Shown here piece after piece: positions 2,849 to 62,295 of a stretch of 64,000 bases of DNA (within the stretch, counting starts at the first letter, position 1; each line of letters opens with the position of its first letter). The DNA lies in assembly GCF_006345805.1 (NCBI RefSeq), contig NC_042999.1:73842001-73906000 (forward strand), read 5' to 3'. A model generated the notes under the pieces. It was given only the letters and a program-made list of their open reading frames with translations. It was not told where the DNA came from and made no database searches. The DNA is from Octopus sinensis. Taxonomy: Eukaryota. Position numbers and translations under genes: made by a program.

Positions 2849-3717
2849 TATGTAAAATGCCACTCAAGTAAATAATATCTTTCAGAAGTTGATATATATC
2901 ATCATATATCATTTTATTTACACAATGGGTGTTGTGTGCTTGAATAGTTGAATGAAATATTTTAAGTAGACCAGCTGTCATACTTGGACAATAGAAGAAT
3001 GTCAATAACTGTTTGCTTTAGTTTTTATTGTCATTGTTTATCAGCCTGACTATCCCATCTTTTGGAAACAGAGTTTCTACAACTAGTTTGTCCCACCTAT
3101 TCTTCCTTTTAAAAGTCAACAGGATATATTTTATGAAAATTTTGGTTGCCATTTCTTGCATGTCAAATAACCATGTAAGATCTCTCTCAGCAGCTCATGT
3201 TCATTTGTGTGTGTGTATGTTATGTATGTATTTGAGTTTTATTTAAGTTCTTGAGATGGTTCAAAGCAACAAAGCATTTTAAGTAAAGAAAGTTCTTATT
3301 GTTTGTAAATATGTAGTTGAGTTGGTGTGTTGGTTGAACTGTCAATGCATACACTCAGGTGTGTGCATCTATTCACATAAGAATCTCAGACAGAATTTTT
3401 AGAATAACTTACAAAATGTTTACTATGTCACTAATAGATTGAATTTGGAGAATCTGCGTCATTTTTTTTTTTTTGCTTTCTCTGTGAAGTCAAGTATTTC
3501 TAGATTTTTGTGCTAATTTGTTGGTACATAACCTAATGCACCTATGATGATAGGTACAAACAATAATTCATAGTCAAGGTAAAAGAGCTTTAAGTTCTGC
3601 ATTAATTAACCAGAAATGTTCCCTGGACAGCTGACCTTTACAATAGTGCATGACTTTTGTTCCCTGCCCCATATGCATGCATGCATGTATGTATGTATGT
3701 ATGTATGTTTGTATGTA

Positions 3718-5206
3718 TCATCATCATCATCATCATCATCATCATCGTTTAATGTCCGTTCTCCATGTTAGCATGGGTTGGACGGTTCGACCGGGGATCT
3801 GGGAAGCCAGAAGGCTGCACCAGGCTCCAGTCTTATCTGGCAGTGTTTCTACAGCTGGATGCCCTTCCTAACGCCAACCACTCCGTGAGTGTAGTGGGTG
3901 CTTTTTATGTGCCACCTGCACAGGTGCCAGGCGAAACTGGCAACGGCCACAGTCGGATTGGTGTATTTTATGTGCCACCGGCACGGAAGCCAGTCGAGGC
4001 GGCGCTGGCATCGGCCACGATTCGGATAGTGCTTTTTATGTACCACCATTCCAGGGGTCCTGGCATCTGCCGGATGCCAGTCATAGGATTGGTTCAATTT
4101 CAATTCCGATTTCGATTTCACTTGCCCCAACAGGTCTTCACAAGCAAAGTGGGGTTGGCATGGGTGCCTGTCGTCGGATGAGGTTCGATATCGACTTTGC
4201 TTGCCTCCACAGGTCTTTGTGTGTCCAAGGGGGAAAGGCATGCATAAGTAGGCTGGACTCACTTGTCCTGCCTGGTCTTCTCACGCACAGCATATTTCCA
4301 ATGGTCTCGGTCGCTGGTCATTTCCTCAGTGAGGCCTAAAGTTCGAAGGTTGTGCTTCACCACCTCGTCCCAGGTTTTCCTGGGTCTACCTCTTCCATGG
4401 GTTCCCTCAACTGTTAGGGATTGGCACTTTTTCACACACCTATCTTCATCCATTCTCGCCACATGACCATACCAGCACAATCGTCTCTCTTGCATACCAC
4501 AACTGATGCTTCTTAGGTCCAACATTTCTCTCAAGGTATTAACGCTCTGTCGAGTATGCACACTGACATTACACATCCATCGGAGCATACTGGATTTATT
4601 TCTCGCGAGCTTACGCATGTCCTCAGCAGTCACGGCCCATGTTTCACTGCCATGTAGCATGGCTGTTCGTACACATGCATCATACAGTCTGCCTTTTACT
4701 CTGAGCGAGAGGCCTTTAGTCACCAGCGGAGGTAAGAGCTCCCTGAACTTTGCCCAGGCTATTCTTACTCTAGTAGTTACACTTTCAGCGCACCCACCCC
4801 CACTACTGACTTGGTCACCTAGATTACGGAAGCTATCAACTACTTCTAGTTTTTCCCCCTGGAAAGCGACGTAAGTTGTTTTCTGCAGATTTTCAGAGTT
4901 TATTGCTCCTGAGCATCTGCCACATACAAAAACTATCTTCCCAGTTAGCCTTCCTTTGACATTGCTTCACCTCTTATGTGTCCATAGTTTACACTGGGTA
5001 CATCTTACAGAGTTTCTACCTACACCTTTTCTACAGATCGAGCAGGGCCATCTTCCTGAATACATTTGTGGTTTGTCTACCTTCCTACTTATTAGTACTT
5101 TGGTTTTAGCTAGGTTGACTCTAAGGCCCCTCGATTCTAATCCCTCCTTCCACACCTGGAACTTCTCCAGTTCTGATAGTGACTCAGCAATTAGAGCAAG
5201 GTCATC
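3718..5206 (-). mobile_element. 5'-truncated RTE-clade LINE (RT C-terminal half, ORF2 end, 3' UTR, (GAT)n tail)
   Basis: ORFs 4967-5266 (DDLALIAESL...GLRVNLAKTK) and 4259-4723 (LSLRVKGRLYDACVRTAMLHGSETW...GRGRPRKTW); truncation falls at the DD of the YADD motif (5201-5206); (CAT)n at 3718-3746. Confidence 0.9.
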
Positions 5207-6983: not shown

Positions 6984-9627
6984 CAGTTGAGGGAACCTGT
7001 GGAAGAGGTAGACCCAGGAAAACCTGGGACGAGGTGGTGAAGCACGACCTTCGAACTTTAGGTCTCACTAAGGAAATGTCTAGAGACCGAGACCTATGCA
7101 ACAGTATGCTGTGCGTGAGAAGACCCGGCAAGACTAGTCAGGCCATAACCCGTGGCCCCTACCTGGACGTAGTCAGTCCTCCTGTGCATACCTTCCTTCT
7201 TGTGACACTTATGAAGACCTGTTGAGGCAAGTGAAAATCAAATCAAAACAAATCAAAATGATGAACATCAGTGGAATTGTATTCTTTGTGGTACCAGTGC
7301 CGGTGGCACACAAGAAAACCACCCAAACGTGGCCGTAGCCAGTACCGCATCGACTGGCCTCCGTGCTGTGGGCACAACAAACACCATCCGGTCGTGGCCG
7401 TTCGCCAGCCTCATCTGGCACCTGTGTCGGTGGCACATAAAGACACCATCCGAAGACCCGCGCGACGTAGTCAGTCCACCTGTGCATACCTTCCCTCTTA
7501 TGACACTTGTGAAGACCTGTTGAGGCAAGTGTGTGACACTGTGAAGACCTGTTGAGGCAGTGTGTGACACTGTGTGAAGACCTGTGAGGCAGAGGCAAGT
7601 GTGTGACACTTGTGGAGACCTGTTGAGGCAAGTGTGTGACACTTGTGAAGACCTGTTGAGGCAAGTGAAAATCAAACCAAATCAAAATAGATGAACATCA
7701 ATGGAATTTGTATCTTGTGGTTCCAGTACCGGTGGCACACAAGAAAACCATCCGAACATGGCCGTAGCCAGTACCGCATCGACTGGCCTCCGTGCTGTGG
7801 GCACAACAAACACCATCTGATCGTGGCCGTTCGCCAGCCTCATCTGGCACCTGTGTCGGTGGCACATAAAAACACCATCCGAAGACCCGGCGACGTAGTC
7901 AGTTCACCTGTGCATACCTTCCCTCTTATGACACTTGTGAAGACCTGTTGAGGCAAGTGTGTGACACTTGTGAAGACCTGTTGAGGCAGAGGCAAGTGTG
8001 TGACACTTGTGAAGACCTGTTGAGGCAGAGGCAAGTGTGTGACACTTGTGGAGACCTGTTGAGGCAAGTGTGTGACACGTGTGACACTTGTGAAGACCTG
8101 TTGAGGCAAGTGAAAATCAAACCAAATCAAAATAGATGAACATCAATGGAATTTGTATCTTGTGGTTCCAGTACCGTGGCACACAAGAAAACCATCCGAA
8201 CGTGGCTGTAGCCAGTACCGCATCGACTGGCCTCCGTGCTGTGGGCACAACAAACACCATCTGATCGTGGCCGTTCGCCAGCCTCATCTGGCACCTGTGT
8301 CGGTGGCACATAAAAACACCATCCGAAGACCCGGCGACGTAGTCAGTCCACCTGTGCATACCTTCCTACTTATGACACTTGTGAAGACCTGTTGAGGCAA
8401 GTGTGTGACACTTGTGTAGACCTGTTGAGGCAAGTGAAAATCAAATCAAATCAAATCAAACCAAATCAAAATAGATGAACATCAATGGAATTTGTATCTT
8501 TGTGGTACCAGTACCGGTGGCACACAAGAAAACCATCCGAACGTGGCCGTAGCCAGTACCGCATCGACTGGCCTCTGTGATGTGGGCACATAACAAACAC
8601 CATCCGATCGTGGCCGTTCGCCAGCCTCATCTGGCACCAGCCTCATCTGGCACATAAAAACACCAACCGAAGACCCGGCAAGACTAGACAGGCCATAACC
8701 CATGGCCCCTACTTGGGACGTAGTCAGTCCACCTGTGCATACCTTCCTTCCTTCTTGTGACACTTGTGAAGACCTGTGAAGACCTGTTGAGGCAAGTGAA
8801 AATCAAATCAAATCAAATCAAAATAGATGAACATCAATGGAATTTGTATCTTTGTGGTACCAGTGCCGGTGGCACACAAGAAAACCATCCGAACGTGGCC
8901 GTAGCCAGTACCGCATCGACTGGCCTCCGTGCTGTGGGCACGTAACAAACACCATCCGATCGTGGGCGTTCGCCAGCCTCATCTGGCACCTGTGTCGATG
9001 GCACATAAAAACACCATCCGAAGACCTGGCAAGACTAGTCAGGCCATAACCCGTGGCCCCTACCTGGGACGTAGTCAGTCCACCTGTGCATACCTTCCTT
9101 CTTGTGACACTTGTGAAGACCTGTTGAGGCAAGTGAAAATCAAATCAAAATAGATGAACATCAATGGAATTTGTATCTTTGTGGTACCAGTGCCGGTGGC
9201 ACACAAGAAAATCATCCGAACGTGGCCGTAGCCAGTACCGCATAGACTAGCCTCCGTGCTTTGGGGACGTAACAAACACCATCCGATCGTGGCCGTCCGC
9301 CAGCCTCATCTGGCACCTGTGTCGGTGGCACATAAAAACACTATCCGAGCGTGGTCGTCTGCCAGCCTCGTCTGGCACCTGTGTCGGTGGCACATAAAAA
9401 CACCATCCGAGCGTGGCCGTTCGCCAGCCTCGTCTGGCACCTGTGTCGGTGGCACATAAAATCACCCACTACACTCTCAGAGTGGTTGGCGTTAGGAAGG
9501 GCATCCAGCTGTAGAAACACTGCCAGATCTGACTGGCCTGGTGCAGCCTTCGGGCTCCCCAGACCCCAGTTGAACCGTCCAACCCATGCTAGCATGGAAA
9601 ACGGACGCTAAATGATGATGATGATGA
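6983..9627 (+). mobile_element. RTE-LINE 3' end whose 3' UTR is amplified into six tandem units
   Basis: Starts with the ORF2 end (AVEGTCGRGRPRKTWDEVVKHDLRTLGLT); the anchor gacgtagtcagt recurs at 7166, 7464, 7892, 8336, 8717 and 9068; a single tail ggaaaacggacgctaaa(tga)n ends at 9627. Confidence 0.9.
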
Positions 9628-9649
9628 TATATATATATATATATATATA

Positions 9650-21576: not shown

Positions 21577-22780
21577 GATGAGATGCAGTTCAGTTTTGTT
21601 CCAGGTAGAAGCACCACTGATGCCATACTCCTGGTTCGACAACTGCAGGAGAAATACCTAGCTAAAGATAAACCCCTCTACTTAGCTTTCGTGGACTTGG
21701 AGAAAGCCTTTGACAGGGTCCCCGATCCCTTATATGGTGGGCAATGCGGAAACTGGATTAGTAGTGGAGGTAGATGCTCAGAGAGTGTCACCACTAGAAT
21801 ACGAATAGCCTGGGCAAAGTTTAGAAAGCTTCTACCCTACTGGTGACAAAGGGTCTCTCGCTCAGAGTGAAAGGTAGATTGTACGATGCATGTGTGCAAA
21901 CTTCCATGCTTCACGGTAGTGAAACATGGGCTGTGACTGCAGAGGACATGCATAGGCTTGAAAGAAATGAAGCTAGTATGATCCGTTCAATGTGTAATGT
22001 CAGTGTGCACACACAACAGAGTGTAAGCACCCTGAGAAAAATGCTGGACATAAGAAGCATTGGATGTGGCATGCAAAAGAGACGTTTGTGCTGGTATGGT
22101 CATGTACTATGGATGGATGAGGAGAGATGTGTGAAGAAGTGCCATTCCCAAACAGTTGAAGGAATCTGGGATAGAGGTTGACCCAGGAAGACATGGGATG
22201 AGGTGGTGAAGCATGACCTTTGAACATTGGGCCTCATAGAGGCAATGACGAAAGACCAAGATCTCTGGAGATAAGCTGTGACTGTGGAGACCCGACAAAT
22301 AATGTGAGTTCATGGCTGTTTCCTGCACCTGCTTCACATAGCAGCCCCAACCCATCCAAAGTACCTTGGATTGCAGGACGGCCTGCTGTGCTTACCCTGG
22401 ATCATAGGGTGACTTGCTGTGCTTGAGGAGACCTATTGAGTCAAGTACATCAACATCAAATGGAAATTGTAGCTGCGATACCTGTGCTGATGGCATGTAA
22501 AAAGCACCATCCAAATGTGGATGATGCCAGCGCTGCCTTGACTGGCTTCCGTGCCGGTGGCACATAAAAAGCACCAACCGATCCTGGTCATTGCCAGCCT
22601 CCCTTGGCACCTGTGCCAGAGGCACATAAAAAGCACACACTACACTCACAGAGTGGTTAGTGTTAGGAAGGGCATCTAGCTGTATAGACACTGCCAGATC
22701 AGACTGGAGCTTGGTGCTGCCTCCTGGCTTCCCAGACCCCAGTCGAACCATCCAACCCATGCTAGCATGGAAAACGGACA
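21577..22780 (+). mobile_element. RTE-clade LINE fragment with internal deletion, plus 3' UTR
   Basis: MQFSFVPGRSTTDAI...FVDLEKAFDRV joined directly to SSGGRCSESVTTRIRIAWAKF and LSLRVKG...GSETW; tail catggaaaacggac at about 22780. Confidence 0.85.
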
Positions 22781-22885: not shown

Positions 22886-23266
22886 ATGCAAGTAAGACTC
22901 AAAAGAGATCTAAAGAAGAATGTAACAGTCAAGAAGGTGAATGACAATGACCTTTTTGTGTGCAATATCTGTAACAGACCATGCCTGTCTTTGGCTGGCC
23001 TCAAATTGCATCTGCGAATGCATGGAAAACGAACCTCCATCATCTATTCTGACTATATGTCTGTGAACACCTTTGAATGCAGTGTATGCCAGAAGGTTTG
23101 TAAACCCAATGGAGGCCTCGAAAGACATGTTAAGATCCACAAAAAGCAGAACTTATCTGTAGGTATTGGTGGTCCAAATCAGAGGTGCAATCTATGCGAG
23201 TGTCTTTTCAGAACATTGTCTGGTTTGAAAAGCCACATCAGACGCCATGATGGTGATAAGGTGTAG
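22886..23266 (+). CDS. Open frame with three C2H2 zinc fingers (probably the C-terminus of an RTE-BovB-like LINE ORF2)
   Basis: C-x2-C-x12-H-x3-H at aa 26-46, 65-85 and 101-121; 18- and 15-aa linkers with no TGEKP; hairpin ggtggt..actc..gagt..accacc (23272-23307) and a microsatellite follow the stop. Confidence 0.6.
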   Translation: MQVRLKRDLKKNVTVKKVNDNDLFVCNICNRPCLSLAGLKLHLRMHGKRTSIIYSDYMSVNTFECSVCQKVCKPNGGLERHVKIHKKQNLSVGIGGPNQRCNLCECLFRTLSGLKSHIRRHDGDKV

Positions 23267-25347: not shown

Positions 25348-26916
25348 TCATTTGTTGCAGTTATCTTCATCACTACTGCCTGAAATATCACTTTCACCAT
25401 CACTGACGCTATCTTTGGATTCTTCATCATCTTCAATGGCTCTAATATGCTCGTAAAGCTTGTTCAGATGTGAATTAGCCTTGTTAATGCATCCTTGGAT
25501 TGTTTTGCGCTCCAGATTCTGAAATGATGCATACAGTCATGCCAGCACCTGCTTGATGATGGTGTTCATGGTGTACTATATTCCCACTTCATCCTTGACA
25601 ACGACCCATATGAGCTCGATCAGCTGCAAATTGGAATGATGCAGTGGAGAAAAGATGACCTCATGACCTCTTTCTCTTGCCATGGAACAAACGACTGGAA
25701 AGATGTGTAGTTTGTTGTACTCCCTCAGCTTTTCCCAAAGCACACACTTCAGGTCTGCTTTGAATGGAATCTCTCGTTCTTGACATGGCACCTGCATTTG
25801 AGCCTTTTTCCACCATCCTTCTGGTGTTGATTCAGGGAGATTAGAGTGATGTTTGGCATTGTTCATCACAATGATAGCATTTCTAATCCCCCAGTCATCA
25901 AGAGCTTTGAAGTGCTTCTCTATCCACTCAACAAAATACTTGTGGTTGAACATCCCATGGTAGTCTTTTGTTTGCTTTCCTCCTACAAAGACATGCAGAG
26001 TGTCCACCATTAAGTGAGCCATTTGATTTTCATTTTGAGCTTCTTCTGGCACAGTGGAGTCAGCATCAATAATGGCTATGATGAAACAGTATTGTTTCTT
26101 TTGTGTTGTGTTTTCACTTGTTGGTCCTGCTCATCATTCAGATTATACAAACTATCATCTTATTGAGCATAATTCTTGTAAATATGGCTCTCATCCATGT
26201 ACATAATTTGTCGCTTCTTTGCTGCATTGAGAGAAACTGATCTGACTGTATAGAGACCTTGCTTATGAATGTTCTTGACTCGGAGCTTGTAGCACATTAT
26301 TCCTTTCTTCTTTCCATGATGGTAGTTGTTTCACTTCAGTAATCTTAGCACAGATCTCAGAGATGCTTGGACTTGCTTTAGTTGATCACAGTTAATAGCA
26401 ATAAAACTATTTTTGATACAACAGTCCACCACATCCTAAGCAACAGTCTTAGTGTGAATTGTCCAACGATCTCTGACAAATTTCTGGATTACGGAAGTCA
26501 AATGATGAAGATCAAGAACTACCGAAGTCTATGGATTTTGATTTCCAGTCATCTTCTGCTCAGAAATTTCTTCAGTCTTAACAAATTTGGTCTACATTTC
26601 ATTGCAGAGCTTATTACTTCAATCAAGGACATTTGCAGTATGGTTTGTGGCATCTACATTCTTCTTTTTTCGATCAGGTTTCTTATTACTGAGCAGCACA
26701 TGTTCATGACAAAATTTGGCTTGCACAGAGAGAATATCCAACTTCTCCTCTTTGGTAAGGTTCCTAGGTCAATTTTTTTTCACAAAACTCTCCACAGATT
26801 TGAGAAATTCATTATCTACAACCTTTATGCATCTTCTTGACATTTCCCTGTCTTTTGTTTCTTCTTGGCTCCAAAATGTGATCTTCAACTTGACCCTTTT
26901 CTTCATTTCTTTCCAT
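25348..26916 (-). pseudogene. IS630/Tc1/mariner-group transposase relic with long second-D-to-E spacing (Sailor/DD82E-like)
   Basis: YMDESHI (first D at 26193-95), QYCFIIAI, KDYHGMFN, IIVM(N)NAKHH ... LIELIW with 81 residues between the second acidic position and E; acidic tail ends at TGA 25348; putative ATG at 26916; stops and frameshifts present; TIRs not located. Confidence 0.75.
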
Positions 26917-27263: not shown

Positions 27264-27296
<33 letters not shown>

Positions 27297-27780
27297 TTAG
27301 CGTCCGCTTTCCATGCTAGCATGGGTTGGACGGTTCAACTGGGGTCTGTGAAGCCAGAAGGCTGCATCAGGCCCAGTCTGATCTGGCAGTGTTTCTACAG
27401 CTGGATGCCCTTCCTAACGCCAACCACTCCATGAGTGTAGTGGGTGCTTTTTACGTTCCACCCGCACAGGTGCCAGATGGAGCTGGCAAACGGCCACGGA
27501 CGGATGGTGCTTTTTACGTGCCACCAGCACGGGGGCCAGGCGAGGCTGGCAACAGCCACGAACGGATGTTGCTTTTTACGTGCCACCGGGGGCCAGTTGG
27601 GGCAGCACTGGCAACGGCCACGATCGGATGGTTCGCTTACTTGTCACCGGCACTGGTATCAGAGCTGCAATTTCCATTGATGTTGATCGACTTCGATTTT
27701 CGTTCTGCTTTCTGATATCTGATTTGATTTGGTTTGATTTTGATTTTGATTTTCACTTGCCTCAACGGGTCTTCACAAGT
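27264..27780 (-). mobile_element. RTE-type 3' UTR element
   Basis: (cat)n, near-identical in reverse to the 3' part of 11241-11686; also carries the tttgattt / cacttgcctcaac segment seen in the 7-9 kb array. Confidence 0.8.
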
Positions 27781-34605: not shown

Positions 34606-35460
34606 ATGGACAAAATCTGGCATCATAATGGGTTTAGTCCCCAGGGGATGATGCTCCAGTTTTATCAACAGTGTAAAAGTAGACATCTGAATTTAGAAGG
34701 GAAGGGAGAGTGTTGAAGAAGACCTGAAGTCTAGACATCCTGCAACTGCCACCACCAAGAAAAACATTGATTGTATTCACCACATGGTGATGGATGACAG
34801 GTGATTGACTATAAATCCAATAGCCAATGATATTAAAATATCTTGTGAGAGAGTTGAGAATACTCTGCACAATAAACTTGGCATCACAAAATTTTCTGCT
34901 TGGGGTGTCATATTTTCAAACATCTGATCAAAAGTGCACTAGGCTGATCCCATCACGGAAAAATCTGACATTGTTTCAGACAGATCCATCTGGTTTCCTT
35001 GAACATTTCCTGACCCTGGATGAGTGTTGGCTTCACCACTTTAAACCAGAGATAAAGGGACAATCCATGCAGTGTAAACACCCCTCCTTGCCTGCTGTTA
35101 AGAAGGCCAAGTTTGTTTCATCTGCAGGGAAAATTATGGCCTCAGTTTTTCCAGTTACAAAAGGTATCGTGTTAATTGACTATCTTCAAAAGAGCCACAT
35201 CATCAATGAAGAGTATGTCAATTATTGAGGCAGTTACAAAAGGCTATCAAGACCAAATGTCCAAGAAAACTGACAAAGGAGTCTTGTTTCATCAGGGACA
35301 ATGCTCCAGCACACAAATCCTTGGTTTCAATGGCTGATATGCATGACTGGCTTTGAACTGGTTGACAACTCTCCCTATACTCCTGATTTGGCTCCATCTA
35401 ACTATCATCTGTTCCTCAAGGTAGGAAAACATTCAGATGGGAGCCAGTATCACAGTAATA
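34606..35460 (+). pseudogene. Mariner (DD34D) transposase pseudogene
   Basis: MDKIW start, LDECWLHHFKPE, SAGKIMASVF, DNAPAH (frameshifted), PYTPDLAPSNYHLF. Confidence 0.9.
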
Positions 35461-40789: not shown

Positions 40790-42540
40790 TGCGACAGGTG
40801 TCTCCTCTCCAGCCCTATTTTGCTCTTCAGATGATATCTGAAGTAATATAGCAAACCAGGGTTGGAGATAAAAGTTCCCGTCATGACTCCTTTCATTCTA
40901 GAACTAGAACTCTTTCAACACTGTGACTGTGCACAAAAACATGCCGCATCTTCCTTTGATAGTCCGGGTGGCGGTACAATCTTGATCATGGACTCAGCAT
41001 ATAGCTGTACTCGTCCTAGATGCAACAGTATGTGTTCTATGTGAATTATCAAGTCTGAAAGCTCCAGGCACTGTACAAGAATGTGCAGAACAGTTTCATC
41101 ATCCTGCCCATACCTTGGGCATGCTGGTGGCACAGACATTCCATGCCTAGACAATTTGTCGTGAACAGGTAATGCACTCCTATAGCACTGCTAGGTAAGG
41201 GATTTCTGGTAGTTATCAGGTACCCTGGCCTGAAAGGTCTTTGAAACAGGTTGGTTAGCTGGCCCTCATCGAGTCCCTCTTATACTCTACCATCTCTCTA
41301 TAGAATACCAAGGTGATATTCCCACTACCGGCCTTATGGATTAGCATGAGTGCCTGTTGGCACTCTTTTTGCCATTCAGTCATGTTGTATCTTTTAATGA
41401 AGTCAGGTTTGAGTCCCTCCAAGGAGGCCAGTCGTGGAAAGAATTCCTCCACCAGCGAATTCCATACCTGGTCACCATTCAAATAGAGCCAGAGGTGCCT
41501 TAGCCTCAGCGCATGCCTGTACATCATTAGCCATGGCATTCCTAACCCACCCTTTAGTGGTCCTTGGCAGCAAACAGAGCACTTCACAGGCAGTTTTCCT
41601 CCCCTCCACAAAAAGCAGAAGAGAAAGCGTGCCAACTTGCTTAGCCATGAATCAGAGCAAGGGACAATGGTCAGATGGTAGGTAATAAAAGATGCAATAT
41701 ACACGTGCACCACCTCTTCCCTCCCTTTCAGGGATAGTGCCCTTCCAGACCAGGTCTGGATGAGGGCTTCCACCCTAACCGCCACCTCATACCAATTCTT
41801 CTGTCTGGGAATCTGGTCCAAACTAGATTCCAAACAACTTAACAGGACCATCCGTCCAGTGCCCCATGTCGCTGGACATTATTGTCTTGCCACTCTAGGT
41901 GCCAAGTCACAAGCTGATGGACTTATTCTTGTTAATTTTCGCTCCTGCTACCACTCATATCCTTTGATTGCATCCTCTACACAATGTAGCTGAGCTTCAT
42001 TGGACACGGTGATGGTGACATCATCCGCATATACCAAAACAGACTTATTATATCCCAATTCATTGGAGATGCCGCCCCACAAACTCTCCAGCCTCTGCAG
42101 CAATGGCTCATGGGCCAATACATGCAGAAGTGGAGACAGTGGGAACCCTTGATGAACTGTGCACTCGATCCTAAATGGCACTGACTGTTTATTGGGACTG
42201 TGGATTTGATACTGCCAAAAATGGCAGTGATCCAACCACAGAAGTCCGGGCCTAGCTCAGCCACCACCAGATACTGGTGTTCTACTCTATCAAAAGATTT
42301 ACTTTGGTCTGAATGGACCAGTGCCCCACCTTTACCAGATAGTTTACCAATCCTCTCTAAGGGGTAGTGCAGGAGATGGAGATTATCCTAGATTGACCTG
42401 CCTGGAATGGTGCATGTCTGTGCCCTCCCAACAAAATTCTCCGTGGCATGGCCAAAGAAAAGAAACTCTGAATGAACTAAATAAAGCTTATAGCTTTATA
42501 TATATTTCAGCCAGCATGTTGACTGATTTGTGCTAGTAGA
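40790..42540 (-). pseudogene. L1/Tx1-clade LINE ORF2 fragment (RT to CCHC knuckle)
   Basis: QTCTIPGRSI.DNL, VHQGFPLSPLLHVLAHEPLL, YADD at 42020-31, FLWRG...KGGLGMP, CP(R)...ETVLHILVQC. Confidence 0.85.
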
Positions 42541-46159: not shown

Positions 46160-46570
46160 TTTTGTTTTGTGAGTTCCTTGGTGACCTCATCTGTGTTGAT
46201 TCTACATTAAGAGCACTCAGTCCTCTCTGTAAAGTGGTCAGCATTAGGAAGGGTATCCAGCCATGGAAATCCATGCCAAAACAGACCTTGCCAGTGCAGA
46301 TGTCATGTGAAAAAAAACCCAGCCCATTTTGTAAAGTGGTTGGCATTAGGAAGGACATCCAGCTGCGAAAACCATGGCATAATAAACCTTGCTAGTGCTG
46401 GTGAAAAGCACCCCATCCACTCTAATAAAGTGGTTGGCTTTAGGAAAGGCATTCAGCTGTAAAAACCATGCCAAAACAGTGGAGCTTGATGCAGTCCTCT
46501 GGCTTACCAGCTCCTGTCAAACCATCCAACCCATGCCAATATGGTAGACAGATATTGAATGATGATGATG
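46160..46570 (+). mobile_element. RTE-type tail with three tandem ggttggcattaggaagggcatccagc-like modules
   Basis: Module copies near 46235, 46335 and 46430; tail gatattgaa(tga)n. Confidence 0.65.
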
Positions 46571-46625
46571 ATATATATACATACATAAATAAATACATAC
46601 ATATATATATATATATCGCTGGTCA

Positions 46626-46940: not shown

Positions 46941-47595
46941 ATATATACACATACATACATACACACACATACAAAATAGAAAACCCTTGATCAAGGTGCC
47001 ATGCTGTAAGACTGAGTCCCAAACCACATGATTGCAAAATTTTTATAACTGTACAGCCAAGCCATCAACTACAGCCAATCTTTACAAACTCATCTCTCCA
47101 CCTCTTATCGACTTTGTTGTAACCACTCCTCCAGGCCCTGCACTAACCATTGATATGCCAAGTCATTTCTCTTTGGAAGATCATTTCTCTGGAATCTCTT
47201 CCTTGTTCGTGACTTTCAGAAGTTGGTGCTGATTTGCAATAGTGTAAGTAGAACATTTACATCAGTCTCACCAGTTGACTGACAAGGGTCGTGGGCTCTG
47301 TTTCTTCTTCACATGTAGAAAAAAAAAAAAAATTCGAGGCACCTTTCTTGGAATTCAGTCTAGAATGTCTGTGTGTTCTAAATATATCATTGATTTAATT
47401 TTGCTTTGATAAATAAAATTGCAATGACATAAATTTATTTATTGTCCACCACCACCACCACCGCCATCCCAACCATATCATCATCGTTATCGTCACCACC
47501 ACCACCACCAATACGTTTTTTTTAAAGCAATATATGATGCTGCTATAACAGAGTTTGGTATACAGTGGTCAAATTGTTTATCATTAAGCAAAAAG

Positions 47596-47654
47596 TTGGC
47601 GAGAACTGCCTGTTCGTTCATGGAGTGCAGTTATTGCTTCGGCTATCATTTCCT
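47596..47654 (-). repeat. 59-bp inverted copy of histone H1 coding sequence
   Basis: Reverse complement matches 49224-49282 at 58/59 positions. Confidence 0.95.
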
Positions 47655-49037
47655 AAGTGAAGCTCCGATAATATTGCTAGAGATGAAAAAAGGCGCTCAT
47701 TATTTGTTTGTTGTTTTTTCTGATTCTCATTTACCAAAACACTGTTGTAATCAATTCATGGCATTTCTTATTATCGTTATAAATAAACATTATGTAAAAG
47801 TAAAAGCAGACGATATCTATTACACACTGAAATTGACATTGACAGGCAATTGACACGATTTCATTTTCATCTGTGACAATGACGGGAGCGATGAGAGAGC
47901 CCCTACGAGGCCACTCACCCGCCTAGAAATAATAGCCAAATATTCTATTTTCTCATAGTCTATAAAAAAATGAGAGCATATATTGGATGATGTAATCTTA
48001 AATAAATATTGTCTGAAGATGGAAAATATTTGTAGGGTCTCCTCGATTGGAGCTCAATACCTCCAATAGTGTTGTTTATGACGATGATGTCGACGACAAC
48101 AATTCTAAAAATTATGACGATGGTAATCATATTGGCCATAATAATTCAAACTTTGTTGACTGAATTTAATTTGTATAAATAAATAAAATAAACAAAAATT
48201 GTTTAAAAGAGAAGCGATCAAAGGAAGGAACCTCGGTAACTTATATTGAATAAGCATTCATTATCATCATCATCGTCATTATTATTATTTGGTCCATTGT
48301 AATAACCTATTTAGTCCATTGTAATAACTTAATTTGCATATTATATTGTATTTCACTTGATATATTTTGTATTGAGTGATTTGATTTATTGTCAATGATG
48401 ATGCACTCATAATAAATGTTTTAACCACCAGCTTATAATTCCTCGTAATTATTTCGATATTTAAGAAAAATCGTTTCTGCGCGAACTGAAGTGAAACATT
48501 CTACACTTAGAATAGATATATTTTAACAAAAATATCCTATAGATAAGAATCCATTGATTTTTTAGGTGTGATATAAGCCTTTTTTACAGTTCTAATACAA
48601 CCACTTATTTCTTGGTTTATCCCAAATGTATGTGCGTCGCATCTCCAATGTGCATGGTTTTCTACAAAGCCATTATGCATGAAAATACCCAAACCAAATT
48701 AATTATTTAAGAACAAAGAATGGATTTCTATATATTACCAATAAATTTTATAAAAATTCAAAAAATAAGTTATAAAAAGGTATTTTTCAGATGGGCTGTA
48801 GTAATCTGCTTACCAACATGTCAAAGAAAAATTGAATGAAAATTGTAACAACAAAATTTATTGATTATTAAAGTAGATTTTAAGAAAGTACCATTAATGT
48901 AAAATAGAATTATAAAAATAAAAATATTTGTTCTATTCGTCATCAATAAAAACTAAGCATTTTTTTGAACAGTCTAAGCACATTCAAACATCTTTCCCCA
49001 TAATACCCGCTGTAAATTCGAATTTGTCTACTACTAC

Positions 49038-49091
49038 GTCCGCGAAAGCATTATAAATACAGCATCAGTCAGTCACCCTGCATCACATTCA
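49038..49091 (+). promoter_or_regulatory. Histone H1 core promoter
   Basis: TATAAATA 49052-59, cap-site-like ACATTCA 49085-91, GTCCGC 49038-43; no exact AAACACA H1 box nearby (closest is AAACATC at 48986). Confidence 0.7.
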
Positions 49092-49108
49092 TCACTAACA
49101 AGTTAATC

Positions 49109-49681
49109 ATGCCGGACACTGAAGCTGCTGCTGAGACTGCTGCTGCCCCGCCAGCTACTCCAGCTAAGACGAAGAAAGCTGTAAAAGCGAAAGCTAGAAC
49201 TACTAAAAGTCATCCTAAATACAAGGAAATGATAGCCGAAGCAATAACTGCACTCCATGAACGAACGGGCAGTTCTCGCCAAGCTATAATCAAGTATATT
49301 AAAGCCAACTTCAATCTCGGAGGTGGCGATAAAGTTATTGCTAACAACGTAAAGCAATCATTGAAGATGAGAATTTCCTCTGGCGATATTGTCCAGACAA
49401 AGGGTGTTGGAGCATCGGGATCTTTCAAGTTGGTTGCTGCAGGTAAATCTAAGGCGAAAGCTACCAAGTCTAAAACCAAGAAAGCTAAGGTGAAGAAGCC
49501 TGCTGCTAAGACAGTAAAAAAGACACCCAAAAAATCTCCTAAACCTAAGAAAACTGTTAAAGCGAAGAAAGTTGTAAAGGCAAAGAAACCCGCCAAGAAA
49601 ACTGCTAAGCCTAAAAAGGCCCCTGCCAAGAAGAAGGTTGCTAAAAAACCAGCCAGCAAACCAAAGAAGGCTAAGAAGTAA
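49109..49681 (+). CDS. H1: Histone H1 (linker histone), 190 aa, intronless
   Basis: Ala/Lys/Pro N-tail, winged-helix globular domain (SHPKYKEMIAEAI...GSSRQAIIKYI...QTKGVGASGSFKL), Lys-rich C-tail with S/TPKK motifs. Confidence 0.98.
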   Translation: MPDTEAAAETAAAPPATPAKTKKAVKAKARTTKSHPKYKEMIAEAITALHERTGSSRQAIIKYIKANFNLGGGDKVIANNVKQSLKMRISSGDIVQTKGVGASGSFKLVAAGKSKAKATKSKTKKAKVKKPAAKTVKKTPKKSPKPKKTVKAKKVVKAKKPAKKTAKPKKAPAKKKVAKKPASKPKKAKK

Positions 49682-49704
49682 ATTGTTCGCATTTTATTTC
49701 AAAC

Positions 49705-49720
49705 GGCCCTTTTAAGGGCC
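49705..49720 (+). promoter_or_regulatory. Replication-dependent histone mRNA 3' stem-loop
   Basis: GGCCCT-TTTA-AGGGCC preceded by AAAC and followed by AACAA, 23 nt after the stop codon. Confidence 0.95.
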
Positions 49721-51879
49721 AACAAAATTTTTGAGTTGGTCGCATTTCGATTATGAATGATATCTGACTTGGTCTAATGGCCGATTACCAAGTGTTTTGA
49801 TCTTTGTCTCTATTGTAATCTTGTAAATATTTTCCTTACGTGCTTTTGCTAATGGCATACTTACTCAAGTGTGTTCCACTCGATATTTTTTTCAACTTTC
49901 AGAATTTTCTATACATTTCAATTGGTTGATTTTATATCAATTTGGAAAGAAAAATTAGGCGCGCAATCTACATTTCGAGAATTTCGCGCAATCTACACCA
50001 TCTGAGGTATTATAAAATTTTATAGGTACCCATTTTGGGTGCATATTTTACGTATCTTACCCGTGTTTTTGCATGTCCCTCAGCGCTCTAAATAATGAAT
50101 AAGTTACTTACTTATTGTAAGTCATTTGGCTAGTTTGAAATGCATTCCTGTGCAGGAGTTGGGCAACAAAGTGAAACCACGGAACATTACAATTTTTCCA
50201 GAACTCATTCGCTGCTATTTCCAGTGTTAGACATGACAAATTGAAAGTAAAATATACACTATCTGAAGGGCATTTGTAGAAAATTTCATTAAATGTACGC
50301 TTTAAAGTTATAGGGAAACAGTTAAGCCATGTGAATATTATTTCTTTAATTTTATGCCTGTTTTCCAACCAGCCCAGAGTGCCAAGCATCTTGCTCTCAA
50401 ATTCTTCCGCCTCGTTTTTGAAAGAAATTTAGCTATGATTGTAATCTACACCATCTGAAAGGTATTTGCCAAGCGACCCACAAACATTTTAGGCATTCTG
50501 TGTGATTAAAACATGGTAAGTCCCATTGGGCTTACTTGGCAAGCAATTTAGAATGATCAGTCATATCCACATTTGATTTTATTTATAGGGACTATTAAAA
50601 TGGATCAGTTGCGAGTGAGACTCCTTGTTGGCTGACCGAAGCATTCAATTACTGCCATTGGCTTACAAGAAAAAAAGAATGGAAGTGTGAAGGCGCGAAA
50701 TACGAATTCGGAAACTAGTAGAAAGCTACATGCAACCATTTTGGCGCTTTTTCGTTGCGTCCATGGTTTCCGTGTTTTGAAGTGTGGGATATTAAAATTT
50801 AGAAAAAAACTCGGAGGTCAGTTTGAATAATAACAATGGTATTGATATTTGAATGAGGCATGCTTGCTGAAAATTATAATATGCAACAATCATGAAAATG
50901 TTTCATGTTTTGCAGATATATTTCCATGGACGTACTCTGGAGGCTGATCGATTGCTAACAGCTAGGCATAATTTGCATTTTCTAGTTATTTTTTAAAATG
51001 TATATTAGTATCAGCCTCTTGGTGTTTTTCTCTAAAATAACCAGCCTTACGGAGCGATAAAGTATCCCCCGGTTTGATGTTTCTAGCTCGTTTTGTTTCG
51101 CTGTTATTTGCACAGCATTCAGTCAGCTCTTCGAGACTAAAAAACATAACGACCATAACTATCCTAATTTTCTATGTTTACTATGTCGGAGAGATTTGGC
51201 TTTCTAGAAGGCAGATCGACTACGTTGAGATTGCACTGCTGGTTGTTCTGGTGTGGTGGATCTACAATTATTTTCGGAAAGACTTAGTAGCCACTCGATC
51301 TTCCACAAACATCAAAAACTTTTTAAATAATTGAAACGTGACTAGGCAGTAAAGGCATTGCAGAATCCATACCGAACATTCTAAGTGCCGTGCTGGCAAT
51401 TTTTGTTGATATTTGGGAGAATTTTAAGTTTCTTTTGTTCTGAGGCTCCTAATATACTAAGAATTTAAATCAACCATATAATGTAGCCTAACGGAACCAA
51501 ATCCTTAAGTATCTGGACTTGTCGATAACCATTTCTTCCAGCCATTAGGGTTTGAGACGTTTGAAGGGGCAAGGACCGTTTTTGGGTATGGAGATTCCGA
51601 TTCTAAAAGAAAATTGGCAAAAATAGCAACTTCAAAATTCCACCCCATTTCTTCATTTTTCACTTTTTCCAAATTTTTTTTTGGCGAAATACGGAGATCA
51701 ACTTTAAAAATTACCTAAACCCTCTCCTCTCCCGATTCTACGGCCAGGCTATCCACATCTCACAATCTTTTTGGCACATACGTACATACCGTTTCGAATG
51801 CCTTTTATTGTGTATTCCCTACACCAGTGTACCCTTGTGTTTTCCTTTTAACTTTCAGAAAAATTGATATTTTTAAATA

Positions 51880-59399: not shown

Positions 59400-60200
59400 G
59401 AACGATAAAACAATACTGACTTCTAATGTCGTTCGTCCACCGTCTCAGTTGACCAACTCCATTTGTGACTGTCAATGCTCTCTCTACTGTGTCCCAAAAC
59501 TCTGTTTAGTATTCACAGTGTGTCACTGGAGCCTATTGAATGCGAAATCATGATTGGTGAAATTTTGTTGATCATATCGGCAATATTCTAGCGAATCGCC
59601 AATGAAATTTTCAGTCATGGTGAATTGAACGAAATAATAAGAACTAATTTAAAGACGAACGAGTGGTAGGTATTCCAGCCAGTTGCTGTTGTCATGATAA
59701 GCTCTAAGAGCGGGTGTCAGTTGTCGGTCGGACCGTTCCACCATGCTGTTGGCTGCAAAATGGTAAGCAGTTGTGGGGAACCTTTTTACAATCTAAGAGG
59801 CGAGTCAATTCTGAGAAGAGATGTCTGTGTCTGTTGTAATGGTAGATGTGCCAAAATAGGCAGTCCAATATTAAAGAAGAGCTTTAGCTATCATTTCTGC
59901 TGTGGTATCACGAAGAGGGACGCCTTCAGGCCAGTGAAAGAAACGATCCACACAGGCCAAAAGGTATATGCAATTTTGAGACGGTGGCAGTGGGCCGGTG
60001 ATGTCTATATGCACATGTTGAAAACGTACATTTGGTAATGAGAAAGTTCCCTGAAGCGATTTGACAAAATTTCGCTTTTTGACAAGGGACGCAACTCTTG
60101 GTGAAGTCCCTGACATCTTTGTCGATATCAGCACACATAAATCGTGCAGCATTTAACTTCAGGGTGGAATTTACTCCAGGATGTGATAAATTGTGTAGAG
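59400..60200 (-). pseudogene. Ty3/Gypsy integrase fragment
   Basis: LHNLSHPG...CVPCQKAK (HHCC), FQHVHIDITGPLP...LACVDRF..WPE, and degenerate ANSMVER. Confidence 0.85.
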
Positions 60201-60960: not shown

Positions 60961-61704
60961 TATATATATATAAATATCAGATATGTGCCATCAGTAATTA
61001 TTCAGGATAGGCAGTTGTTGACCTTTATGTAGTAAAACACACAAAAAAATAAGTGAAGCACAGGCACACGACTGAGTTGAAGGCAGATTTACTTCTACCT
61101 TTATAGCATGTAAAGAAAATGGTGTTATAAGAGTGTACTCAGCATGTGTACTACAGTAATACCAAGCATAGCTTAAATACTGATATTGAAAAGCAGGGGC
61201 AAAATATGCCTACCTAATCTACAAACAAATAAAATATTTTGCATGTTATGCATAGTAATCATAATTGTATTGAATTAGGCACATATTTTGCCATACAAGT
61301 AAAATGTTGCTATCAATCTATTTTATTCAAGGTAGGTACTGCTTACCTTGCCTACCTAGGTGGCACGTTCTTGATATTCATACACACACACACACAAACA
61401 AGGAACTGGAAAAATTGGGTAAATTTTAAATTCCACATTACACATGTTTCATTGCATGATAGGAGTTACATGCAGAAAAACATGTATAGGATTTCCTATC
61501 TGTGATTCTCCAGATAAATTACTCAGTAATTGATCTGCAAACAGAAATCACCAGAAATTTCAAATGCTATGTGCTTTATCTGTAATAAAACATTTATATG
61601 CATACATTTGATTACTGCAACATGTAGATATGCTTCATGTAGACAGAACTTGGTTTATAACCCCTTCTATACATTATATATTTATATATCACTCACATAT
61701 GTAA

Positions 61705-62295
61705 TGCCATCATCATCATCATTTAATGTCCATTCTTCATGTTGGCATGGGTTGGATAGTTTGACAGGAGCCAAGAGAGCTGCCAAGGCTCCAGTTGTCT
61801 GTTTTGGCATGGTTTCTATGACTGGATGCCCTTCCTAATGCCAACCACTTTATAGAGTGTACTGGTCACTTTTATGTGGCTCTAGCATGGGTACTTGTAC
61901 ATGACACTGGCACAGGTGCTTTTATGTATCACCAGCACCTATGAGCTTGCAAGACTAGGACCCCTCAGCTGAGAAAGGGATGTAGAGAACATACCTGTAT
62001 GTAAGGATACTTCATACCGTGTCTTCCTGTGCCTACCCCTTCCACATGTTTCTTTCACAATTAGCACTTCTTGATGCAGTTGTCCCCTTCCATGCTCATC
62101 ACATGACCATACCAATGCAGTCTTCTCTCTTGCACACTACATCAGATGCCCCATATACCCATTTTTCATCTCAAATCGCTTACACTCTGTTGTACCTGCA
62201 TATTAGCATTACTCATCAAGCAGAGCATGCTGGCTTCATTTCTTTCAAGTCTTTGCATGTCCTCAATAGTCACAGCTCATGTCTCACTGCCATGT
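61705..62295 (-). mobile_element. Degenerate RTE-LINE ORF2 C-terminus plus tail
   Basis: Minus strand SETWAVTIEDMQRLERNEASML...VQERRLHWYGHV; (cat)n tail at left. Confidence 0.75.

What the first reader, a model, noticed from the sequence alone, without database searches (positions are those of the whole stretch)
47596..49282. A 59-bp piece of the H1 coding sequence is copied in inverted orientation 1.57 kb upstream of H1
Seen: 47596-47654 is the reverse complement of 49224-49282 (start of the globular domain, about KEMIAEAITALHERTGSSRQ) at 58/59 positions. The one difference is at 49267 (ACG vs ACA, synonymous, a CpG-type transition). The match stops abruptly on both sides, with no TSD, tail or other histone sequence. 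Established: coleoid ADAR editing needs complementary sequence, and DNA repair can capture short local templates. Inference: (a) a templated repair insertion, (b) if transcribed on the plus strand, an antisense RNA against H1 mRNA, or (c) an editing-complementary arm in a read-through transcript from upstream. The normal TATA-driven H1 mRNA would not contain it.
Basis: partly seen in the sequence, partly recalled or inferred. Interest (0 to 1): 0.7.

Follow-up and report, generated by a model that had tools for sequence, protein, structure and literature searches.

The report
Inverted repair scar copied from H1
A 59-base stretch of the octopus histone H1 gene was copied backwards into non-coding DNA 1.6 kb upstream after this lineage split from Octopus bimaculoides; it looks like an ordinary scar of error-prone DNA repair or replication, and nothing shows that it has a function.

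Summary
Window 47596-47654 is the reverse complement of 49224-49282 (H1 codons K39-Q58) at 58/59 positions, there are no other copies in the window, and no shuffle reproduces the match. The window is Octopus sinensis chromosome CM016861.1. The orthologous, collinear locus of O. bimaculoides lacks the copy. At that site it has 14 nt (TT-ATTTGCTAAA-CT) where O. sinensis has TT-[55 nt of H1 antisense]-CT. So the event was a deletion-insertion that removed about 10 nt, with 2-nt microhomology at both junctions, and no target-site duplication, tail or transposon. Two Argonauta H1 loci also lack it. The single difference is a C>T change at a CpG in the copy. With 6% flank divergence, 1/59 fits neutral decay at any age up to the ~34 My split, so the high identity needs no selection to explain it. 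The best explanation is a long-range inverted templated insertion: snap-back synthesis during end joining, or a replication template switch (MMBIR-type). H1 lies inside an annotated minus-strand gene in both species, so a host pre-mRNA would contain both arms and could form a 59-bp duplex. There is no evidence of transcription, editing or small RNAs. Raw-read confirmation and O. vulgaris could not be checked. Interest is low to moderate.

The parts
47596..47654 (-). H1-derived insert. Read on the minus strand it equals H1 sense codons K39(2nd base)-Q58. The terminal TT (47596-47597) and CT (47653-47654) are shared with the ancestral site, so 55 nt are unambiguously templated.
   Evidence: 58/59, unique in the window; absent from O. 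bimaculoides; microhomology.
49224..49282 (+). Donor or template segment inside the H1 coding sequence, at the start of the globular domain.
   Evidence: The sequence is conserved as coding sequence in O. bimaculoides (57/59) and Argonauta (48/59, 81%).
47611..47611 (+). The single difference: T in the copy opposite G49267 in H1. This is a C>T change at a CpG on the plus strand of the copy, after insertion.
   Evidence: Both Octopus H1 genes have ACG.
47586..47595 (+). Left junction flank (AAGCAAAAAG), collinear with O. bimaculoides AAGTAAAAAA.
   Evidence: 36/40 identity in the left 40 nt.
47655..47664 (+). Right junction flank (AAGTGAAGCT), collinear with O. bimaculoides AAGTAATGCT.
   Evidence: 37/40 identity in the right 40 nt.
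49109..49681 (+). Intronless histone H1 gene (190 aa, 'H1-delta-like') with a TATA box at 49052 and a 3' stem-loop at 49700-49745. It is nested in a minus-strand gene model.
47446..47510 (+). (CCA)n microsatellites 85-150 nt left of the insertion site, length-variable between the two Octopus species. They are a possible fork-stalling or breakage context (inference only).

Best explanation
This is a lineage-specific, long-range inverted templated insertion (a deletion-insertion scar). It arose in the O. sinensis lineage after the split from O. bimaculoides. A break or stalled fork about 1.5 kb upstream of the H1 promoter was repaired by priming DNA synthesis on H1 coding DNA 1.57 kb away on the same chromosome. 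The geometry fits an intra-strand snap-back. After resection of at least 1.7 kb, the 3' end of the minus-strand tail (...CACTTAG-3') folds back and pairs its terminal AG with the CT of ...TTTCCT in the same strand inside H1. It copies about 55 nt, dissociates, and its new ...CCAA-3' end pairs with the TT of the other break end. About 10 nt (ATTTGCTAAA) are lost. A replication template switch (four-point type 1-4-3-2, MMBIR/FoSTeS-like) gives the same product. The copy has since decayed neutrally, with one CpG transition. Shown: the repeat, its absence at the orthologous site, the replaced bases, the junction microhomologies, and the lack of retroelement hallmarks. Inferred: the polarity (insertion, not loss), the enzymology, and neutrality.
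For: The repeat is real and unique. The O. bimaculoides locus L004 is collinear (window 47060-50181 matches L004 7889-11079) but has TTATTTGCTAAACT in place of the 59-mer. The net 45-nt gain is the largest indel in the 2-kb upstream alignment. Two Argonauta H1 loci lack any inverted copy within +-10 kb. Microhomology of 2 nt at both junctions occurs in only 0.7% of random local 59-mers. No TSD, poly(A), TE sequence or extra H1 pieces are present. Orientation and cis proximity match the published signature of MMBIR templated insertions: inverted, near the template, with microhomology at the junctions (PMC8421209). They also match the reverse-complement F2 fragment of the four-point template-switch model (PMC5453318). 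The abstract of PMC11292364 reports Pol theta unimolecular stem-loop synthesis primed by two terminal base pairs. One difference in 59 is what neutral decay predicts at 6.1% flank divergence (P(<=1)=0.44 even at the full 34 My). The difference is a CpG C>T in the copy.
Against: The template distance (1.57 kb) and length (55-59 nt) exceed those of the catalogued short-range events, although those catalogues search only within 100-200 bp by design. The polarity rests on one sister species, because the site does not align to Argonauta. Two-nucleotide microhomologies are weak evidence and assume that O. bimaculoides shows the ancestral bases. The base left of the insert differs between species (G vs A) and is unexplained. 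Raw reads and a second O. sinensis or O. vulgaris assembly could not be examined.
Confidence: 0.8

Rival explanations
1. The element is an exapted RNA element. The insert gives the minus-strand host pre-mRNA (or an unannotated plus-strand read-through RNA) a 59-bp intramolecular duplex with H1 sequence. That duplex is used as an ADAR substrate or as a hairpin-RNA (endo-siRNA) precursor that acts on H1 or on the host gene.
For: A gene model on the minus strand spans the whole 20.5-kb locus in both Octopus assemblies, so both arms would lie in one intron. The stem is predicted in the MFE fold of 1.8-kb transcripts of either strand (57-58 of 59 pairs; arm duplex -116 and -112 kcal/mol). In the minus-strand RNA the only mismatch is A opposite C. 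From general knowledge, long perfect duplexes are ADAR and Dicer substrates, and coleoids edit heavily. Template switching is reported to create RNA hairpins and miRNAs (PMC8794818, PMC10710096; titles and abstracts).
Against: No expression, editing or small-RNA data could be examined. The element is absent from O. bimaculoides and Argonauta, lies outside the conserved promoter block, and is no better conserved than neutral expectation. The canonical H1 mRNA contains only one arm. No plus-strand gene is annotated within 10 kb upstream. The host gene model itself was not verified, and no exon was found in the shared 20 kb.
Confidence: 0.07
2. The insert came from RNA. A reverse-transcribed fragment of the abundant H1 mRNA was captured at a double-strand break (a class of templated sequence insertion without LINE hallmarks).
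For: The 59 nt lie entirely within the transcribed, intronless H1 mRNA. The window carries reverse-transcriptase-bearing elements, so RT activity exists in this genome. There is no TSD or tail, as described (from my own knowledge, not checked here) for non-LINE templated insertions.
Against: A trans-acting cDNA could land anywhere in a ~2.7-Gb genome (size). Landing 1.57 kb from its own gene strongly favours a cis DNA template. The microhomology-flanked, inverted, nearby geometry is the DNA template-switch signature.
Confidence: 0.05
3. It is an assembly or polishing artefact of the long-read O. sinensis assembly.
For: Only one assembly contains the locus, and no independent contig or read could be retrieved.
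Against: Both flanks continue collinearly with the O. bimaculoides sequence right up to the insert. The insert is short, inverted, differs from its donor at one CpG site and has microhomology junctions. Mis-joins or chimeric reads do not produce that combination.
Confidence: 0.05
4. The insert is ancestral to both Octopus species and was deleted in O. bimaculoides.
For: One difference in 59 is statistically compatible with an age as old as the split (P=0.44). No outgroup aligns at the site.
Against: It requires a deletion that removed exactly the H1-derived bases and left 10 unrelated nucleotides in their place. That is much less parsimonious than one templated deletion-insertion.
Confidence: 0.03

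Closest known systems
Template-switch mutations under the four-point model (Loytynoja & Goldman 2017, PMC5453318), event type 1-4-3-2
   Same: A stretch of the descendant sequence is explained by a reverse-complement copy (fragment F2) of nearby sequence on the same chromosome. The copy replaces a few ancestral bases and creates a perfect inverted repeat. Flanks are otherwise collinear with the sister species.
   Different: Those events were searched for only within 100-200 bp, with F2 of 10 nt or more. Here the template is 1.57 kb away and F2 is 55-59 nt. Flank identity (36/40 and 37/40) is below their 95% filter, because the species pair is more diverged.
MMBIR/FoSTeS templated insertions (MMB-TI; PMC8421209)
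   Same: The insertion is inverted relative to its template, lies near it, and has microhomologies at both junctions.
   Different: The published detection window is 100 bp or less from the insertion. This is a germline, fixed or assembled event in a mollusc, with a template 1.57 kb away and microhomology of only 2 nt.
Polymerase-theta-mediated end joining with snap-back templated insertion (PMC7165422, PMC11292364, PMC2943611)
   Same: The junction is a deletion plus a templated insertion with short microhomology. Snap-back on the same resected strand necessarily gives an inverted copy. Priming from two terminal base pairs has been reported.
   Different: Typical templated inserts are shorter and copied from within tens of bases of the break (for example, mostly ~5-34 bp in yeast, abstract of PMC11724301). 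Polymerase dependence cannot be tested here.
Drosophila-type hairpin RNA (hpRNA) loci and template-switch-born miRNA hairpins (PMC10710096, PMC8794818)
   Same: An inverted partial copy of a protein-coding gene can form a long duplex in one transcript. Template switching is a reported source of new RNA hairpins.
   Different: The loop here is 1.57 kb and includes the gene's promoter, and there is a single 59-bp arm pair. There is no evidence of transcription or small RNAs, and no conservation.

Membership tests
Template-switch mutation (four-point model) | The novel segment is a reverse-complement copy of sequence on the same chromosome | tested here: met
   58/59 reverse-complement identity, unique in the window.
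Template-switch mutation (four-point model) | The segment replaces ancestral sequence at a site whose flanks are collinear with a close relative | tested here: met
   The O. bimaculoides site has TTATTTGCTAAACT; flanks are 36/40 and 37/40 identical.
Template-switch mutation (four-point model) | Short range (template within about 200 bp, as the published search defines it) | tested here: not met
It works like this class but falls outside the short-range definition.
MMBIR / TMEJ templated insertion | Microhomology at both junctions | tested here: met
   TT on the left and CT on the right are shared by the ancestral site and the template. This occurs in 0.7% of random local 59-mers. The evidence is weak because each is only 2 nt.
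MMBIR / TMEJ templated insertion | Dependence on Pol theta or on a break-induced replication polymerase | not testable with these tools
   This needs genetics or break-repair assays.
LINE-mediated retrocopy / processed pseudogene | Target-site duplication, 3' poly(A) or 3'-end-anchored copy of the mRNA | tested here: not met
   There is no TSD, about 10 nt are deleted instead, there is no A-tail, and the fragment is internal to the CDS.
Transposon-carried gene fragment | The insert is flanked by transposon sequence or terminal repeats that are absent from the empty site | tested here: not met
   The net gain equals the H1-derived bases only, and no repeat family overlaps 47000-49100.
ADAR editing-complementary sequence for H1 mRNA | It lies in the same transcript as the edited site | tested here: not met
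   For the canonical mRNA, the TATA box is at 49052 and the 3' stem-loop at 49700-49745, so the copy lies about 1.4 kb upstream of the transcription start. A read-through transcript cannot be tested.
ADAR editing-complementary sequence for H1 mRNA | A-to-G editing observed in the paired region | not testable with these tools
   No RNA-seq data are accessible.
Hairpin-RNA / endo-siRNA locus | Both arms are transcribed in one RNA and yield small RNAs | not testable with these tools
   A minus-strand gene model spans both arms and the stem is predicted to form, but there are no expression data.
Linker histone H1 (the donor gene) | PF00538 globular domain with a lysine-rich tail | tested here: met
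   PF00538, E=1.4e-26, residues 35-108; KKAK-rich C-terminal tail.

The most novel reading that the evidence does not exclude
A template-switch insertion has just created a hairpin-RNA locus. The host gene's intron now contains antisense H1 followed by a 59-nt sense H1 segment, giving a near-perfect 59-bp dsRNA with one A:C mismatch. ADAR or Dicer could process it, tying H1 dosage or host-gene processing to host-gene transcription. It would be a caught-in-the-act example of how inverted-repeat regulatory RNAs against a parent gene are born.
Probability: 0.05. Interest if true: 0.6.

Novelty: new member of a known kind. Interest (0 to 1): 0.25.

Why it matters
This is a clean, polarised example of a long-range (1.57 kb) inverted templated insertion in a cephalopod germline. 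Both junctions and the empty site are readable. Published catalogues of template-switch mutations search only within 100-200 bp, so events like this one are systematically missed. A genome-wide scan of this kind could show how often coding fragments are scattered in cis and how often they create long intramolecular RNA duplexes in a lineage known for heavy RNA editing. For this locus alone the practical message is modest: the repeat is real but needs no functional explanation.

Tried and rejected
(1) A longer, degraded H1 pseudogene around the copy: rejected, because sensitive blastn finds no other H1-derived piece in the 20.5-kb locus. (2) A transposon or SINE carrying the fragment: rejected. 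The SINE-like repeats end near 46610, nothing in 47000-49100 recurs in the window, and the empty site shows that only H1-derived bases were gained. (3) Homology-guided conversion seeded by the TTATT(T)GCT similarity between the ancestral site and the insert: rejected as chance (longest common substring 5 nt, p=0.54). (4) Dating or inferring selection from the 98% identity: rejected, because 1/59 is compatible with neutral decay over the whole ~34 My. (5) Polarising with Argonauta: only ~440 bp of promoter (48628-49071) aligns and the insertion site does not. The two synonymous H1 differences inside the arm are uninformative: one is derived in O. bimaculoides and the other is three-state. (6) Independent confirmation of the junction through exact look-ups of two junction-spanning ORFs and a metagenome scan for the arm core: nothing was found. 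(7) Identifying host-gene exons from conservation peaks (42.9-43.8 kb, 55.1-56.3 kb): no convincing coding ORF. (8) Splice-like AG...GT around the copy on the plus strand: the GT is also present in O. bimaculoides without the insert, so it is treated as chance. (9) Rfam: no known RNA family overlaps the copy.

Full report
OBSERVATION. The finding is accurate. Window 47596-47654 is the reverse complement of 49224-49282 over 59 nt with one mismatch. Allowing three mismatches, these are the only two copies in the 64-kb window, and no dinucleotide-preserving shuffle produces a match. The H1 arm encodes (K)EMIAEAITALHERTGSSRQ at the start of the linker-histone globular domain (PF00538, E=1.4e-26, residues 35-108). 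The mismatch is G49267 (ACG, Thr) against T47611 in the copy (ACA when read in the H1 sense). Identity stops abruptly at both ends. A word-size-7 blastn of H1 +-100 bp against the surrounding 20.5 kb finds no further H1-derived sequence.

CONTEXT. The exact H1 protein is encoded on Octopus sinensis chromosome CM016861.1 (GCA_006345805.1), and locus L001 equals window 39109-59681. H1 is a single intronless gene (49109-49681). It has a TATA box at 49052 and a histone 3' stem-loop at 49700-49745 (Rfam RF00032, 30.4 bits, E=1.3e-5, slightly under the gathering score). No core-histone ORFs are in the window. In both O. sinensis and O. bimaculoides, a called gene on the minus strand (270-aa and 274-aa products, no Pfam hit) spans the whole 20.5-kb locus, so H1 and the copy are annotated as lying in an intron of an opposite-strand gene. 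I could not identify that gene or any of its exons in the shared region. The window is otherwise rich in transposon debris.

COMPARATIVE TEST. The 90% protein cluster of this H1 has one other member, O. bimaculoides XP_014789044.1. Its locus (L004) is collinear with the window: 47060-50181 matches L004 7889-11079. L004 contains no inverted H1 fragment within +-10 kb, and neither do the two Argonauta hians H1 loci. The pairwise alignment shows the empty site. O. bimaculoides reads ...CATTAAGTAAAAAA-TT-ATTTGCTAAA-CT-AAGTAATGCTCC.... O. sinensis reads ...CATTAAGCAAAAAG-TT-GGCGAG...(55 nt)...CATTTC-CT-AAGTGAAGCTCC.... The event therefore replaced about 10 nt with 55 nt of H1 antisense sequence. 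The TT and CT at the two junctions are shared by the ancestral site and the template. Such 2-nt matches at both ends occur in 0.7% of random 59-mers from the neighbourhood. The flanking 40 nt are 36/40 and 37/40 identical between the species. The net 45-nt gain is the largest indel in the 2-kb upstream alignment. There is no target-site duplication, no A-tail and no transposon sequence.

AGE AND DIRECTION. Substitution divergence in the 2 kb upstream of H1 is 6.1% (JC 0.064). With the ~34 My split quoted in PMC10700109, that is about 0.9e-3 per site per My. A neutral 59-mer would collect about 1.9 changes in 34 My, so P(<=1)=0.44. The 98% identity is therefore uninformative about selection or gene conversion, and it constrains the age only loosely. 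Both Octopus H1 genes have ACG at the variant codon (Argonauta has ACA), so the simplest reading is a C>T transition at a CpG in the copy after insertion. Of the two synonymous H1 differences between the Octopus species inside the arm, the copy carries the O. sinensis state at both. One is derived in O. bimaculoides and the other is three-state, so they do not sharpen the dating. The polarity (insertion in the O. sinensis lineage, not loss in O. bimaculoides) rests on parsimony. A loss would have to excise exactly the H1-derived bases and leave 10 unrelated ones. The site itself does not align to Argonauta, where only ~440 bp of promoter (48628-49071) is conserved.

MECHANISM. The anatomy has these features: an inverted copy, a template in cis 1.57 kb away, a small deletion at the target, microhomology at both junctions, and no retroelement hallmarks. 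This is the published signature of templated insertions made by template switching. MMBIR templated insertions are described as located close to, and inverted relative to, their template and flanked by microhomologies (PMC8421209). The four-point model describes the reverse-complement F2 fragment (PMC5453318); this event is type 1-4-3-2. A concrete path that fits the bases is as follows. A break occurs near 47597 and is resected by at least 1.7 kb. The 3' end of the minus-strand tail (...CACTTAG-3') folds back on the same strand and pairs AG with the CT of ...TTTCCT inside H1. About 55 nt are copied, and the new ...CCAA-3' end pairs with the TT of the other break end. Pol theta is reported to do unimolecular stem-loop synthesis from two terminal base pairs (abstract of PMC11292364). 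A replication-fork template switch gives the same product, and the sequence cannot tell the two apart. The (CCA)n tracts 85-150 nt to the left vary in length between the species and are a plausible but unproven trigger. The event differs from the catalogued cases in scale: the template distance is 1.57 kb and the length 55-59 nt. Those catalogues search only within 100-200 bp by design.

FUNCTION. Nothing found here requires a function. The element is lineage-specific, lies outside the conserved promoter block, and has diverged as expected for neutral DNA. The canonical H1 mRNA contains only one arm. A continuous transcript of either strand would form the 59-bp stem: 57-58 of 59 pairs in the MFE fold of a 1.8-kb RNA, with arm-duplex energies of -116 and -112 kcal/mol. 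The one candidate for such a transcript that the annotation offers is the minus-strand host pre-mRNA, where the single mismatch would be A opposite C. That makes an intronic ADAR or Dicer substrate conceivable, but it is untested, and I give it about 5-7%.

LIMITS. I could not obtain raw reads, a second O. sinensis assembly, O. vulgaris or any RNA data. Exact look-ups of two junction-spanning ORFs and a metagenome scan for the arm core returned nothing. An assembly artefact is unlikely, given the collinear flanks, the single CpG difference and the microhomology junctions, but it is not excluded.

VERDICT. Options (b) and (c) are unsupported. This is a new instance of a known kind of mutation. 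Its interest is low to moderate, and lies mainly in being a clean long-range example of a kind that could be scanned for genome-wide.

Noticed in passing
window 39109-59681 (L001) and L004 1-20573: In both O. sinensis and O. bimaculoides the intronless, stem-loop-bearing H1 gene is a solitary 'orphon' nested inside a long minus-strand gene model (270-aa and 274-aa products, no Pfam hit). No core histone genes are nearby. No such host gene is called at the two Argonauta loci.
   Followed up: partly
window 48628-49071 vs L002/L003 9486-9938: About 440 bp immediately upstream of H1 is conserved at 68% identity between Octopus and Argonauta. Between the two Octopus species, 48759-49048 is at least 97.5% identical. 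This is probably the H1 promoter and regulatory block.
   Followed up: partly
window 49086 (5' UTR) vs L004: O. bimaculoides has an extra 28 nt (TTTGTAGATCTTTCTGCTAGTTATCTTT) between the TATA box and the ATG, relative to O. sinensis.
   Followed up: no
L002 and L003 (Argonauta hians GCA_054771915.1, two contigs): Two loci encode the identical 194-aa H1 protein, but their coding DNA is not identical. They share the upstream promoter block. They could be a recent duplication or uncollapsed haplotypes.
   Followed up: no
window 46205-46610 and at least 15 other places (e.g. 3685-3905, 9458-9649, 27283-27454, 61668-61859): A ~170-220-nt SINE-like repeat family at ~70-77% mutual identity is scattered on both strands. 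Three tandem partial copies lie at 46205-46476.
   Followed up: partly
window 41258-42235 (-), 25579-26052 (-), 34827-35225 (+), 59874-60152 (-): Transposon protein fragments: reverse transcriptase (PF00078, E=2.9e-9), DDE_3 transposase (E=1e-4), mariner-type Transposase_1 (E=7e-7), and a weak integrase core (rve, E=2.5e-3).
   Followed up: partly
window 22886-23263 (+): A 126-aa ORF with C2H2 zinc fingers (PF00096, E=4.4e-11). It may be an exon of a zinc-finger gene or part of a mobile element.
   Followed up: no
window 4262-4723 (-) and 21843-22178 (+): Two related ORFs (MTKGLSLRVKGRLYDACV...HGSETWAV...) with no Pfam hit. They look like the C-terminal region of a repeated retroelement ORF.
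   Followed up: no
window 47446-47510: (CCA)n microsatellites just left of the insertion site differ in length between the Octopus species (24-nt and 16-nt indels).
   Followed up: partly
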